From Blepharisma stoltei ATCC 30299 (Eukaryota; Protista; Ciliophora): a stretch of 64,000 bases of DNA. The notes beneath the pieces are model-generated. The model was not told the origin of the DNA. It worked only from the letters and a program-made list of their open reading frames with translations, and did not search any database. The position numbers and the translations under genes are program-made. Positions within the stretch are counted from its first letter, which is position 1. Each line of letters opens with the position of its first letter. The DNA is taken from assembly GCA_965603825.1 (NCBI GenBank), contig CBFDEM010000029.1, positions 62,001-126,000 on the forward strand, read 5' to 3'. Below are positions 41,942 through 52,664 of the stretch, piece by piece.

Positions 41942-42976
41942 ATGTCATTAGAAAGACTGACAAAGCTAGAAAAGAAGATCATGGATATTTGTGTATTTTT
42001 GCACACAGAAATCTCTTCCATGAATGACAAAACAGACGAAAGTATGATGGATCTTTCAGATGTGCTTCAATTAGACTCATTTGAATCTTTAGAAAATATT
42101 AGTGACACTATCAAAGACTTATTGCGAATCAAGAGGGACTTTCAAATGTCAGAGGACTACAATCACTACAGGTCCCATGAGCAATACCAAAAAGCTTTAC
42201 AAAAATTAGAAGGAGAAGTTAGAAACCATATAAAAATTGAGCAACAAATGAAATTGCATATAGAAAGCACTCAAGCTAAACTTGATGAGATGGAAAAAGA
42301 AAGAAAAGACTCAGAAAGCAGTAGCAGAATTATTGATAAGCTTAAAAGAGATAACTGTCGACTCTCAGAAAAGCTAAAAGAACAGGAATCCTTACGGAGC
42401 AGTGAAGGCGCTTCAACTGAAAGAGAGATGTGTATCACAGATAGAGGAGAAAGGGCTAGATTTGTGCAGGAAATTGCAATGCTGAGGACTGCTAATAAAA
42501 AAGATTCACAAAAGATAGCTGACCTTGAAAAAACAAATAAACGGCTTGAATTAGAACTAGCAAAAAATAAACAATATTTGGAAGAAAGAGATAAAGAATT
42601 TAGTTCTGCTGAACAGAAGTATAAAAAATTAAGAGAGAGCATTAGTCAAAAAGAAAATTATCCAGATACGCTTACAGAGCTATATAAGAGGAAATATGAA
42701 AGAAAATGTGAAGAAATTCGGGTGCTTGAGAAGAGATTAAGCCAAACGAAAGAAAAAACAAGGGAAAACTCAAGGGAGCCAAAAGTAAGAGAAAAAACAA
42801 AGTCACCTGCCCCAAAAAGGTCTGATTCAGCTGCGAGGATTCATAGACCTGAAAGTCCATTTTTATCTACAACAAGAAGCCAAAGTAAACTTAGAGAGGG
42901 ATCTATTGACACCAAAAAGCGTCCAACCTCGTCTACGCATCAAAACTGTTATTATTTAAGTACATCGCGGCGATAA
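41942..42976 (+). CDS. Coiled-coil hypothetical protein
   Basis: 344-aa ORF; YQKALQKLEGEVRNHIKIEQQMKLHIE heptads and a basic S/R-rich tail. Confidence 0.7.
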   Translation: MSLERLTKLEKKIMDICVFLHTEISSMNDKTDESMMDLSDVLQLDSFESLENISDTIKDLLRIKRDFQMSEDYNHYRSHEQYQKALQKLEGEVRNHIKIEQQMKLHIESTQAKLDEMEKERKDSESSSRIIDKLKRDNCRLSEKLKEQESLRSSEGASTEREMCITDRGERARFVQEIAMLRTANKKDSQKIADLEKTNKRLELELAKNKQYLEERDKEFSSAEQKYKKLRESISQKENYPDTLTELYKRKYERKCEEIRVLEKRLSQTKEKTRENSREPKVREKTKSPAPKRSDSAARIHRPESPFLSTTRSQSKLREGSIDTKKRPTSSTHQNCYYLSTSRR

Positions 42977-43132
42977 ATATAGCTAATCTAAATTTAATTT
43001 TTTATAATTCATATACTCCCAAACTTCAAGCATAATTAATTTAGGTTTAAATTTATATTTAATAGGAACTTAAAGTTTTTCAGGAATATCATCAAATTTA
43101 GAACAAAAAGCAATGTGTACATTATATAAAGC

Positions 43133-45274
43133 CTATGAAACCAGCTGATTATCTTTGATAGAATTGGCAGAAATTATAAACGAAAGCTTAGGCTGGGGGA
43201 TCCTAGACGGTGTTTGCGATTTTTGGTATCGAACATCTTCAGGAGGATTTGAGCTCGGCCGAGTTAAAGCAGAAGGACTAATACTGCCTTTTCTTTTAAC
43301 ATGTTCATCTTTATTTCTTGATAGCTGTGCAGCTTTACTTTTAAAAATATTTTCATTTTCTGCCTTAGCTGCAATTGTTTTTAATCTTTTATTAGTCTCA
43401 TCCTGCTGCACCTTTAAATTCACTAATTCTTTTTTGAGCTTCGTTATTTCATCCTGGAATGTTTTTTCTTTCTGCTTATATTTCGTATTCAAAATCCCCA
43501 TCTTGACTTCTCTATCCTTTAGGGCATATTGGTAGCTTTCTAAATCTCTTTCTACTTTATCAAGTCTTCTTGATATTGTATTCTTTTCCGCCCTTTCTTT
43601 TTCTAGAAGCTTGAGTGTTCTTTCGATTTCTTCACAATTAAGATTTTTTCTGATTAGAAATCCAAAGTCTAGCACTTGAAGCCTTAGCCCGAGGGCCAAG
43701 GTTGAAGCTGTTTCGTTTGAGCAGGATTCTGAAGGACTGCAATTCAAAATAAAAGTAATTTTACTTTCAGATCCTCCTAAAGTTGGCTGGAGAATTCTTG
43801 TGAGAATTGAATTTCTAAACGGTACATGGTTTTGCTTGCTCTCTAAGGCTCCAATTACGTCTTGCAAAGCAGATAGCGATTTGTTAATTAGAAGAGTTTC
43901 TTTCAGCATTTCACCAGTTACACTGCTTTTTATTAATCTTTCACTCCCTGCTAAATCAACAAATTGGATTATGCCGGTATCTCTTCCGCTCATTATCTTC
44001 AAAGTATATATTAAATGGCTCCTTGAGGAAAATTCATTTGAGCTAGTTTGCCGTGTGGCTCTTCTTTTTAATGTTTGGTCAATCAAAGAGAGACCATGGG
44101 AAACCCAATCGTTTTGCAGCTCGATTTCTGCTATAGAAACAATATCATTTCAATTCTTGCTCAAAGGCAAATCAGTTAAGAGATTCCTAACTTGTTCATT
44201 ATAAATTTCAATGCAATGCATGGTAACTTTGATGTTTTCATTTTCTAGGAGTTTTTTTAAGGCGTAAAAAGACTGCTCGATAATTCCGTTCATTGTATAA
44301 GTCTTGCCGGAGCCAGTTTGGCCATATGCTATAATGCAAGATCTTCCTCCAAAAGAAGCATGCTCTATACAATCATATGCTTCTTGAAACACTTCCGAAA
44401 TTGTAGACTTTTGGTCAAAAATCTTAGAAAACTCATATTTCTTCTGGGAATTGACTGAGACACGACCTCGAGTCCTTGATGTTGGCATGCTTAAAAATAA
44501 AGTATTATTATCGCATATAATACATGAAGCCTTGCTTGAATCAAGCTCAAGTATCGGTCTAACCCTAACAATCACTTTCAGCATATGGTTTCCTTCAGAC
44601 AAAGCAGGAATAGTAGTATCAGCAGACACTCTTCGTGAAGAGAACCGAGAACTTGGTAACGAACTTTTTGCATTTTCTAGCTTTAAGTTATAGTTTTCTT
44701 GCTGCTTTGTCGCCTTTTCTAAAGCTATTTCAAGTTCCAAAATTTTATTTGTATCTCCATGCTGAGCTACAAGGGTGCTGATTTCTTGTTTTAGTTCTTT
44801 GCACTCATCTCTTAATCTTTGAAGTTCGATTTCTTTTGAAACTGTGATTTCATCTAGCTCTTCTTTATAAAGAATCGCGTTTTCTTCGGCTTGGTAGAGC
44901 TTCTCTTCTAAGTCTTGTTTGGAAAATTCTAAAATTCTTGCTGATTGTTCCCATTGGTCATTCAAATGTTCTAATTCGCGCTTTTGATCTTCATGAGATT
45001 TAAGCTGTCTTTTAAGTTTGTCGACCTCTTCGCATTTTTTTGTGAGTTCGTGCTCATTTTTCTTGTATTTTTCTTTGTAATCTTTAAGTTCATCTTCTAT
45101 GTCTTCTAGCTTCCTTGAAATTTTATGGATTTTTTCATCTTTTTCTGCTACTTCGGCTTCAAGGATTTCTTCGTATTCCTTAGATTGGGCTTGAAATCTA
45201 ATTTTAAAATACTCTTCAAATTCTTGTTGGAGGCTTAAAAGCTGAGATTCTAGTTCAGCTTCTCTTTCGCTCAT
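43133..45274 (-). CDS. Kinesin (kinesin-14-like motor) with an N-terminal NudE/NDE1-like coiled coil, ~708 aa
   Basis: VIVRVRP, AYGQTGSGKTYTM, SSRSH, VDLAGSER, INKSLSAL, HVPFRNS.LT.ILQ. TGA 44150 links the two ORFs inside the motor domain. Confidence 0.88.
45198..45212 (-). other. 15-nt stop-free intron candidate GTATTTTAAAATTAG
   Basis: GT-AG, A at position 10; removal converts EFEEYFKIRFQAQ to EFEEFQAQSKEYE, restoring NudE spacing. Confidence 0.7.
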
Positions 45275-45548: not shown

Positions 45549-46628
45549 TTAATATTTCATTGAAACTATAGCAGGCCTTACTTGTTTTTTAGACATTTGA
45601 ATCACTTGCTGAGCAGTTCCCATTGCTGAATTAAGTCTTTTTGTGATAATCCCTCTCGTGTTTTTTCTATATTCTCTCGCATTAAATTTAGCAGGCCTTG
45701 CTTTCACACTTGGGCCTATCACTATTGGCTGCTCTTGCTCAATTTTAACTTCTTCGTGCTCTCCTTTTTCTTTTTTCTTCAAAGCACTATCAATTTCTCC
45801 ATATAGCTGTTTATTCGCAGCCAAAACCCTTGCAATTCTTGCTTCTTCATTATCATAATCTTGCAAGTCTTCAATTCTCCTTTCCATTTTTTCAACAATA
45901 CTCAAAGCTACTTTTTTCTTTTCAGCTTCAAGCTCTTTTCTGTAATTTAAATCGATATCTTCAATTCTCTCATTCTCATTTTTCATGTCATATTCAAGTT
46001 TGCAAGCAACATCCTCTAAGTTTGCTAGCTGCTCAGTAAGAACCTTTAGTCTATACTCTTTAGTTTGTTTTATATGATACATTGGATCTTTCCTTAGCAT
46101 TTCAAGCCTCTCTTCTTCCTCTCTAATTAATTTAGCGCTTTCTTCAATATCTCTAAGGACTGAAGGGCTAATAGGTCTTGGTGGCAATTCTGTAAACTGT
46201 TTTTCATCAATATCTACTGATGCTTCAAACTGCTGTGTTGGAACTGGCATTAGAATTCTCCCTTCACTATAATTCACAGCAGGGGTTTGCAATGGAATAT
46301 CTTCAATATCATTGACTTCTAAAAATTGCATATCTTGAAGCTCATCTGCATTAATCCCGATATCCTTTTGATATTGGTAACTTATTAGATCATCTTCCAA
46401 ATTTGTTTGGCATCCAGTTTCATCAGTGTGCTGATTTCTCTTAACTTCTTGTATTTGTGAACGAATCGCAGCCGGCTGTGTGTGCTTTTGGTGAATTGGC
46501 TTCAGTAGCTTAGAAGGGCCTCCAAATTGAAGTAATTTAATAGGCTGAGAAGTTTTCTGTGCTTGTGGAAGCTCATACGCAGGAATCCTCATACTCAAAA
46601 GCCCAAGCTTATTTGCGTCAAAAGACAT
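45549..46628 (-). CDS. Hypothetical coiled-coil protein
   Basis: Long ORF; first ATG gives MSFDANK; no recognised domain. Confidence 0.65.
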   Translation of the reverse strand: MSFDANKLGLLSMRIPAYELPQAQKTSQPIKLLQFGGPSKLLKPIHQKHTQPAAIRSQIQEVKRNQHTDETGCQTNLEDDLISYQYQKDIGINADELQDMQFLEVNDIEDIPLQTPAVNYSEGRILMPVPTQQFEASVDIDEKQFTELPPRPISPSVLRDIEESAKLIREEEERLEMLRKDPMYHIKQTKEYRLKVLTEQLANLEDVACKLEYDMKNENERIEDIDLNYRKELEAEKKKVALSIVEKMERRIEDLQDYDNEEARIARVLAANKQLYGEIDSALKKKEKGEHEEVKIEQEQPIVIGPSVKARPAKFNAREYRKNTRGIITKRLNSAMGTAQQVIQMSKKQVRPAIVSMKY

Positions 46629-50903: not shown

Positions 50904-52664
50904 ATGATAAAAATCAACCCCAAAATCTGCAATTCTTTCCTTGGAATGCAATCGATGAAATCATCTTGCGCTTATTCCATATGCCAAAACTCTTCTACAG
51001 ACTATGATACTTGCCCAAAATGCAACTCCACAAGATATTGCTCTCAAAATTGCCTTAGAAAAGATTGGACGGCATCTCATCAATTTACTTGCAGTCAACA
51101 TAAGACTGCTATACAGGACTATATAGAGGATAGAGAGACTAAAATTCTGGGAAAAGGCTCATACGGAGAAGTAAAACTTGTAAAAAACCCAACATCAGGT
51201 CAGTATTTTGCCTTAAAGCAAATAAACAAAGAGCGATTAAAAAGCGATTCTTCTTTATTAGTGATGCTTAGAGAAATAAATATCCATAAAGCTTTAAAGC
51301 ATCCCAATGTAATTCAACTATTCCAGCACTTTGAAGATGATAAAAACGTCTATATTTTATTAGAATATGCTCCGAATGGGTCTTTATTTAAATTAATCAA
51401 AAAGCGCCAAGGCCTTTCCGAAGAAATTGCATGGCATTACTATACGCAAACTTGTGTAGGTCTCAAATACTTGCATGATAACCATATAATTCATCGGGAT
51501 TTAAAGCCAGAAAATCTGCTACTCGATCAATATGGCAATGTAAAAATCTGTGATTTTGGATGGTGCGTGCAGAGTACTGAGCAGAGGCAGACTTTTTGTG
51601 GAACTTTGGACTATATGGCCCCAGAAATGATTTTAGAAAAAGGGCATTCTTTTGAGCTAGATATGTGGGCAATTGGGGTGCTCCTCTATGAGCTATTACA
51701 TGGATATCCACCTTTTCGAGCAGTTAGAGATACTGATAAGTGCCAACAAATTTTGCTACCCAAATTAACTTTTGACCCAAAAATCAGTCCTGAAGCAGCT
51801 GATTTAATTAAAAATTTATTAAGAACAAATCCAGAAGAGCGCTTACAGCTGAATGAAGTGCTAGCACATCCATGGATTGCTAGATACGCTCCTTCCATCA
51901 ATACTAATGTGAATACAAAAGCAATTCATCCTGAGTATGGCCTTGGAGTGATAACCAATATAGAAGGTCTACTATGTACAATATTTTACCATGATAAAAA
52001 TTTCACTCAATATTTAGCTGTTCCTGATATCCCGTATATATTAGAAATACAGCCAAACGATCAAAAAGAAACCCTCCTACAAGAAATAGAGTCCCTAAAA
52101 AGCATTGATTCAGAAGCTTCATCTTTAACTAGAGAAAAAAGGCTTTTACATAGAATCCATAAGTGATGCAAAGCTCCTGTCAAGAGAAAAAATAAATTTG
52201 AAAGGAAATTAAGAAAATCAATTAATCTAAAGGAAAAAAACTTTAAAATAGCTTTGAAATTAGAATTAGAGAGATTTTCAGGGGAAAGCAGAAGCGAAAT
52301 GAGAAGCAGCAATCAAATATCGGACGGCTCATCTGTCATCGATATAAAAGCGTTAAAATTCGTTGATCTAAGAGAACAAAAATCGTCTACGTCTAACAAT
52401 TGTGATGGGAAAACAACTGAAATGACTGGAGACCAAAGCCAAAAAGCCTACCAAAATGATAAAGAGATCAAGGAATTCAATCAAAGCCTCGAGCAGCAAA
52501 GAGAAAGAGAATGCAGAGACTTCAAAAGGTTTCTCAAAACAAATTCAATTGGCTGCCAAACAAGAGATAGCAAAGGAAAGACACCGAATCAGCAAAAATC
52601 TGGAATTACCCACTGGTTCACTGCGATTTTTGGCTGTGTTGAGAGAAGACGTACAAGAGAATAA
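50904..52664 (+). CDS. MYND zinc finger + Aurora-like kinase, ~586 aa
   Basis: CPKCNSTRYCSQNCLRKDWTASHQFTC; REINIH, ICDFGWCV, RQTFCGTLDYMAPEMI; TGA 52164 read through. Confidence 0.85.

What the first reader, a model, noticed from the sequence alone, without database searches (positions are those of the whole stretch)
43133..45274. NudE/NDE1-type dynein-regulator coiled coil fused to a kinesin-14-like motor
Seen: the first ~165 aa read LQQEFEEFQAQSKEYEEILEAEV...RELEHLNDQWEQSARILEFSKQDLEEKLYQAEENAILYKEELDE...LQRLRDECKELKQEI, followed by a complete kinesin motor and a further coiled coil. Known (from memory): NDE1/NDEL1 have EFQEGSRELEAELE...RELEQANDDLERAKR....[24 protein letters not shown]....QRLKDEARDLRQEL, which binds dynein and LIS1; they are normally motor-less. 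Inference: one polypeptide may carry a LIS1/dynein-recruiting module on a kinesin, physically coupling two motor systems or moving dynein/LIS1 along microtubules.
Basis: partly seen in the sequence, partly recalled or inferred. Interest (0 to 1): 0.85.

Follow-up and report, generated by a model that had tools for sequence, protein, structure and literature searches.

The report
Dynein regulator NudE fused to kinesin-14
In this ciliate, and in Stentor, water moulds and other stramenopiles, the NudE protein that normally links LIS1 to the dynein motor is the front end of a kinesin, and a microtubule-tip-binding tag sits at its tail, so one protein may do the dynein-positioning job that yeast shares among four or five proteins.

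Summary
Confirmed and extended. The gene (Blepharisma stoltei CAG9321718.1, UGA = Trp, one 15-nt intron, 708 aa) is transcribed as one spliced RNA covering coil and motor. Residues 1-165 are a true NudE/NDEL1 homologue: NDEL1 is the best PDB hit, reciprocal searches agree, and shuffles and other coils score far lower. All six residues mapped in NDEL1 for binding dynein intermediate chain (E36/E39/E48/E52) and LIS1 (E119/R130) are kept. The motor is kinesin-14 with intact catalytic motifs but no minus-end neck. New here: a conserved C-terminal SxIP (EB1-type) motif; four fused paralogues plus a divergent stand-alone NudE; the same NudE + kinesin-14 layout in Stentor, oomycetes, diatoms and other ochrophytes; and ciliate paralogues whose motor has decayed. 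The genome encodes dynein-1, LIS1, dynactin p62 and EB1. Best reading: an all-in-one adaptor that loads dynein-LIS1 at microtubule plus ends. Binding, localisation and direction are all inferred. One versus several fusion events is unresolved. Ten literature searches found no description. The scan's notes (this genome only) hold no earlier report.

The parts
43133..45274 (-). Whole gene, 708 aa (B. stoltei CAG9321718.1); stop TAG
45213..45274 (-). Exon 1 (Met1 to the first two bases of the E21 codon)
45198..45212 (-). 15-nt intron splitting the codon of E21 (= NDEL1 E39); same position in all four paralogues
   Evidence: spliced out in contigs of runs X1-X3; paralogues
44765..45274 (-). NudE/NDEL1-homologous coiled coil, aa 1-165, one continuous helix
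45158..45223 (-). Dynein-intermediate-chain site: E18, E21, E30, E34 = NDEL1 E36, E39, E48, E52
44936..44971 (-). LIS1 site: E97 and R108 = NDEL1 E119 and R130
44585..44752 (-). Short helix (aa 170-199) and disordered Ser-rich linker (199-225) in place of the kinesin-14 neck
43664..44584 (-). Kinesin-14 motor domain, aa 226-532
44300..44323 (-). P-loop GQTGSGKT
44150..44152 (-). In-frame TGA read as Trp370, in the shortened loop-8 region
   Evidence: W in homologues
43940..44038 (-). Switch I (NxxSSRSH) and switch II (DLAGSE), both intact
43325..43633 (-). Post-motor coiled coil, aa 543-645
43196..43207 (-). SxIP motif (SRIP, aa 685-688) in a basic, Ser/Pro-rich disordered tail; candidate EB1-binding site
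   Evidence: S[RK]IP in 29 of 37 ciliate homologues, 0.25 expected; disorder

Best explanation
An all-in-one plus-end loading adaptor for cytoplasmic dynein-1. The N-terminal NudE coil dimerises and binds the dynein intermediate-chain N-terminus and LIS1, as NDEL1 does (inferred from conserved contact residues). The tail SxIP motif binds EB1 on growing microtubule plus ends (inferred). The neck-less kinesin-14 head, an intact ATPase by sequence, holds the complex on the lattice and may bias it toward the plus end (inferred from kinesin-14 engineering work). Dynein-LIS1 is thus concentrated at plus ends, where dynactin would displace the NudE part from the intermediate chain and start minus-end transport. 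Shown here: gene, transcript, homologies, motif conservation, presence of partner genes. Not shown: binding, localisation, direction.
For: Across 79 fusion proteins E119 is kept in 78/79, R130 in 75/79, E48 in 55/57 and E52 in 59/64, against a median of 17% for other E/R columns. These residues are needed for LIS1 and dynein binding in NDEL1 (PMC3101096; 10.1101/2023.01.13.523097). S[RK]IP occurs in the tail of 29/37 ciliate homologues (0.25 expected), 0/23 unrelated kinesins and 0/19 motor-less NudE proteins; SxIP-type motifs recur in oomycete and diatom tails. Partners in the genome: dynein-1 HC E 1.6e-278, LIC, two LIS1 genes, p62, six EB1 matches over the cut-off. The kinesin-14 neck is absent in the ciliate clade; loss of such sequences, or C-terminal attachment, makes kinesin-14 plus-end directed (PMC9474454). 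Yeast does this job with Lis1, Clip170, EB1 and Kip2 (PMC4046564).
Against: No experimental data. A SxIP motif in Cik1 proved dispensable for Bim1 binding (PMC4338441). The stramenopile members keep a kinesin-14-type neck and so are probably minus-end motors. Many ciliate paralogues lost the motor motifs yet kept the NudE residues, so walking is not essential to the family. A stand-alone NudE exists and could do the classical job. The dynein intermediate chain was not found with the one model tried. The motif counts come from related sequences and are not independent events.
Confidence: 0.55

Rival explanations
1. A minus-end-directed or non-motile microtubule tether: the protein pins dynein-LIS1 to microtubule bundles (cortical ribbons, spindle, nuclear envelope) for sliding or pole focusing, and works with dynein rather than against it.
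For: The motor is kinesin-14. Stramenopile members keep the neck. The CC-motor-CC layout matches plant OsKCH2, a minus-end motor whose second coil aids microtubule binding (PMC5852081). Decayed-motor paralogues recall the non-catalytic Cik1/Vik1 partners of Kar3.
Against: The ciliate clade lacks the neck and has a disordered linker there; the SxIP motif points to growing tips.
Confidence: 0.25
2. A localised dynein brake: the NudE part competes with dynactin p150 for the intermediate chain and with dynein for LIS1, and motor plus SxIP only place that inhibition where plus-end transport should win.
For: NDEL1 competes with p150 for the IC and with dynein for LIS1. A separate stand-alone NudE could supply the activating role.
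Against: Both the IC site and the LIS1 site are kept together, which fits a tether better than a pure competitor.
Confidence: 0.1
3. The NudE coil was captured only as a dimerising stalk or cargo coil and no longer contacts dynein or LIS1.
For: NUDE_C scores stay under the Pfam cut-off and the NudE C-terminal region is absent.
Against: The best-kept columns are the exposed charged binding residues (E119, E48, R130, E52 rank 1, 2, 6 and 7 of 148), in ciliates, oomycetes and ochrophytes and even in paralogues with dead motors.
Confidence: 0.05
4. It ferries LIS1 into cilia for outer-arm dynein rather than serving cytoplasmic dynein-1.
For: A LIS1-like protein acts on the outer-arm alpha heavy chain in Chlamydomonas, and that chain exists in SAR lineages including Stentor (PMC12338079).
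Against: The cytoplasmic-IC-binding glutamates are conserved too; nothing here points to cilia.
Confidence: 0.05

Closest known systems
NDE1/NDEL1/NudE/Ndl1 family (PDB 2V71; Pfam NUDE_C PF04880)
   Same: N-terminal ~165-aa coiled coil with all six mapped dynein-IC and LIS1 contact residues.
   Different: Known members have no motor. Here the NudE C-terminal region is replaced by a kinesin head, a second coil and a SxIP tail.
Kinesin-14 family (Kar3, Ncd, KIFC3, KCBP)
   Same: Motor sequence, tree position (100/97) and fold; the best PDB sequence hits are Kar3, KIFC3 and Ncd.
   Different: The ciliate clade lacks the neck before beta-1, has a remodelled, shorter loop-8 region and sits on a long branch; the N-terminal tail is NudE.
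Plant KCH kinesin-14 (OsKCH2; PMC5852081)
   Same: Internal motor flanked by coiled coils, with a partner-binding module at the N-terminus.
   Different: KCH carries an actin-binding CH domain, has a neck, and lives in cells without dynein.
Yeast Kip2-Bik1-Bim1-Pac1 (plus Ndl1) dynein plus-end delivery (PMC4046564)
   Same: A kinesin, an EB1 link and a LIS1/dynein link used together to bring dynein to plus ends. This is what it probably works like.
   Different: Separate proteins and a kinesin of another family; here NudE, motor and EB1 tag are in one chain, with no CLIP-170-like part.
Hook3 dynein-KIF1C scaffold (PMC6719453)
   Same: One protein bridges dynein and a kinesin.
   Different: Hook3 is an activating adaptor without a motor; NudE is an assembly factor that is displaced on activation.
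Kar3-Cik1/Vik1 (PMC4338441)
   Same: Kinesin-14 with non-catalytic paralogues and an EB1 connection.
   Different: No NudE part; heterodimers are not shown for the ciliate proteins.

Membership tests
NudE/NDE1/NDEL1 | N-terminal coiled coil homologous to NDEL1 beyond generic coil similarity | tested here: met
   a vertebrate-type NDEL1 query ranks the four fusion genes first in the whole genome
NudE/NDE1/NDEL1 | Dynein-IC-binding glutamates E36/E39/E48/E52 | tested here: met
   E18/E21/E30/E34 (residues defined)
NudE/NDE1/NDEL1 | LIS1-binding E119 and R130 | tested here: met
   E97 and R108
NudE/NDE1/NDEL1 | NUDE_C region over the Pfam cut-off; motor-less architecture | tested here: not met
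   16.5-20.1 bits against 30.9, only the start of the model matches; a motor follows. So it is a NudE-domain protein, not a canonical NudE.
NudE/NDE1/NDEL1 | Physical binding to LIS1 and dynein IC | not testable with these tools
   no multimer prediction or assay available
Kinesin-14 | Motor domain inside the kinesin-14 clade | tested here: met
   41-row clade 100/97 against 29 other kinesins; PDB hits. Few reference kinesin-14s, so no subfamily call.
Kinesin-14 | Conserved neck just before the motor core | tested here: not met
   absent in this protein and the ciliate clade, present in modified form in stramenopile fusions; region disordered. Kinesin-14-derived by descent, atypical.
Kinesin-14 | Intact P-loop, switch I and switch II | tested here: met
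Kinesin-14 | Minus-end-directed motility | not testable with these tools
   needs a gliding assay
SxIP-type plus-end-tracking proteins | Conserved SxIP in a basic, Ser/Pro-rich disordered region | tested here: met
SxIP-type plus-end-tracking proteins | EB1-dependent tip tracking | not testable with these tools
   EB1 genes are present; binding untested

The most novel reading that the evidence does not exclude
An ancient, so far undescribed NudE-kinesin-14 family, born once before ciliates and stramenopiles split, hard-wires dynein regulation to a kinesin. Stramenopiles keep it as a minus-end motor; ciliates dropped the neck and turned it into a plus-end-directed, EB1-linked carrier that walks dynein-LIS1 to microtubule tips as a single polypeptide, a natural reversal of kinesin-14 direction.
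Probability: 0.25. Interest if true: 0.92.

Novelty: new variant of a known kind. Interest (0 to 1): 0.8.

Why it matters
How dynein reaches the start of its track, and what NudE/NDEL1 contributes, are open questions studied almost only in animals and fungi. A natural NudE-kinesin-SxIP chain is a ready-made reagent for testing the tether and delivery models, and a candidate neck-less kinesin-14 for testing what sets direction. It extends NudE to ciliates and stramenopiles, where databases call these proteins only 'kinesin motor domain-containing'. Stentor has several copies and allows RNAi, so a role in cell polarity, regeneration or nuclear shaping can be tested directly.

Tried and rejected
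Artefact of two joined genes: rejected by spliced single contigs and by one-ORF homologues in Stentor and a stramenopile contig. Generic coiled-coil match: rejected. Pseudogene at the TGA: rejected, UGA = Trp across the window and homologues have W. 'NudE exists only fused in this genome' (suggested): rejected. Homology of the post-motor coils between ciliates and stramenopiles: no significant profile match. A kinesin-1-like neck linker after the motor: spacing matches by eye, but the model predicts a low-confidence helix there, so not claimed. Dynein IC search with PF11540: no real hit, uninformative. ESM Atlas: NudE among the top hits for the ciliate coil, only unnamed clusters for the oomycete one. 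Literature: ten searches and the kinesin survey PMC2867816 with supplements show no NudE-kinesin; subscription journals are not covered. My own joined spliced models stayed inside scripts and were not sent to search tools: exon pieces were searched by reference, and the database record P0038 stood in for the whole protein.

Full report
Verdict. Its function is inferred, not shown.

Gene and organism. Genes across the window end in TAA or TAG and carry in-frame TGA, which marks a UGA = Trp heterotrich ciliate. The gene runs 45274 to 43133 on the minus strand with one 15-nt intron (45212-45198) and one TGA (Trp370). The 708-aa product is identical to Blepharisma stoltei CAG9321718.1, named only 'kinesin motor domain-containing'. 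Contigs of three runs lack exactly those 15 bases, and single contigs cover 43701-45270 (spliced) and 43104-45135; the intergenic stretch has no cover. The runs are only guessed to be RNA and come from one study, but the spliced intron shows transcripts. My joined model stayed inside scripts; searches used exon pieces by reference or the database record P0038.

The N-terminus is NudE. NDEL1 is the top PDB hit for the single sequence (E 3.4e-6) and for a 28-sequence profile (4.9e-13; next coil 1e-4). That profile retrieves NudE proteins across eukaryotes from 1.84 billion sequences. In reverse, a profile of motor-less NudE scores the domain at 94 bits against at most 15.7 for heptad-preserving shuffles and 15.2 for unrelated ORFs. 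That profile's members were picked with the first one, so this test is partly circular. A vertebrate-type NDEL1 query, which does not depend on that profile for scoring, ranks the four fusion genes first in the genome. The residues needed in NDEL1 for dynein (E36/E39, E48/E52) and LIS1 (E119/R130) binding (PMC3101096) map to E18/E21, E30/E34 and E97/R108. Over 79 fusion proteins E119, E48, R130 and E52 rank 1, 2, 6 and 7 of 148 columns (92-99% kept; other E/R columns 17%). The NudE C-terminal region is missing.

The motor. It has an intact P-loop and switches. Its best PDB sequence hits are Kar3, KIFC3 and Ncd, its best fold hit is KIFC3, and it falls inside kinesin-14 at 100/97 on a long branch. 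The kinesin-14 neck is replaced by a disordered linker. The stretch between EIYN and SSRSH is 65 aa rather than the usual 70-73, with a helix in the loop-8 region; one other Blepharisma kinesin-14 is similarly short. A 100-aa coil follows the motor.

The tail. SRIP at aa 685-688 lies in a basic, disordered tail. S[RK]IP occurs in the last 110 aa of 29 of 37 ciliate homologues (0.25 expected by shuffling), 5 of 11 decayed-motor paralogues, none of 23 other kinesins and none of 19 motor-less NudE proteins; SxIP-type motifs also occur in oomycete and diatom tails. These sequences are related, so the counts show conservation, not independent events. SxIP is the EB1-interaction motif (named so in PMC4338441).

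Distribution. The genome has four fused paralogues with the same intron position and one divergent 215-aa stand-alone NudE that also keeps the six residues. Of 37 close homologues 34 carry a kinesin domain, including Stentor SteCoe_21395, 34447 and 19836. The same NudE + kinesin-14 + coil layout occurs in Saprolegnia, Achlya, Thraustotheca, Aphanomyces, Pythium, Hyaloperonospora, Phytophthora capsici, Thalassiosira profunda and Chrysoparadoxa; the Pythium N-terminus alone again hits NDEL1 first. Many ciliate paralogues have lost the motor motifs. Pseudomicrothorax has such a protein with a weak motor remnant (E 5.6e-4, probability 30%) whose NudE part joins the heterotrich clade (99/97), which suggests the fusion predates the heterotrichs. 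In both trees the ciliate and stramenopile groups are separate clades, but one origin is not rejected (AU p 0.21 for motors; 0.35 for NudE domains, group chosen after seeing the tree). Whether there was one fusion or two is open. Tetrahymena, Paramecium and other alveolates were not properly tested.

Partners. The genome encodes dynein-1 heavy chain, light intermediate chains, two LIS1 genes, dynactin p62 and several EB1 proteins. The intermediate chain was not found with the one model tried.

Mechanism. Most likely (0.55) the protein concentrates dynein-LIS1 at microtubule plus ends: NudE holds dynein IC and LIS1, SxIP binds EB1, and the neck-less head binds or steps along the lattice. Kinesin-14 cores turn plus-end directed when sequences outside the motor are lost or the load is attached C-terminally (PMC9474454), and yeast achieves the same delivery with Lis1, Clip170, EB1 and Kip2 (PMC4046564). 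Rivals are a minus-end or static tether (0.25, and the likelier mode for the necked stramenopile proteins), a local dynein brake (0.1), a mere stalk (0.05) and ciliary LIS1 delivery (0.05).

Novelty. Each part is known; the combination is not described in the papers I could search, nor in the 1,624-kinesin architecture survey PMC2867816. Precomputed NUDE_C hits sit on ten of the homologues, so automatic annotation has touched it without comment. I class it as a new variant of a known kind. Interest 0.8: a dynein or kinesin specialist would be surprised, and it makes the NudE tether and plus-end delivery models testable with one protein.

Noticed in passing
L011:1156-1818 (+), G000 contig C51: Divergent stand-alone NudE, 215 aa, one 15-nt intron, all six binding residues kept and a NUDE_C-like last helix; missed by the fusion-family profile.
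   Followed up: partly
P0033, P0035, P0045, P0050, P0054, P0055, P0059, P0060, P0075, P0168, P0188, P0195 (Stentor SteCoe_4327): Ciliate paralogues that keep the NudE coil, often also the SxIP tail, but have decayed motors; possible Vik1/Cik1-like pseudo-motors.
   Followed up: partly
window 45198-45212: The intron is in frame and stop-free in this copy, so retention would insert five residues into the dynein-IC site; in the three paralogues retention gives a stop. No retained form was seen in the contigs.
   Followed up: partly
L009:1489-2736 (+) and L010:370-1647 (-): Two nearly identical LIS1 genes.
   Followed up: partly
G000 whole genome: At least about 120 kinesin motor matches, a very large repertoire.
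   Followed up: no
P0074 (EukProt g934.t1, organism not given): 918-aa fusion with the ciliate-like compact layout (motor right after NudE, weak neck, SRIP tail) but a motor that groups with the stramenopile proteins; a possible link between the two groups.
   Followed up: partly
P0094, P0157, P0100: NudE-like proteins without a motor in Heterolobosea, Rhodelphis and Spironema, consistent with NudE being pan-eukaryotic.
   Followed up: no
window 50904-52664 (+): Aurora-like kinase with an N-terminal MYND-type Cys/His finger (read by eye).
   Followed up: no
window 41942-42976 (+) and 45549-46628 (-): Flanking coiled-coil genes with no confident Pfam family; no sign that they belong to the finding.
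   Followed up: partly
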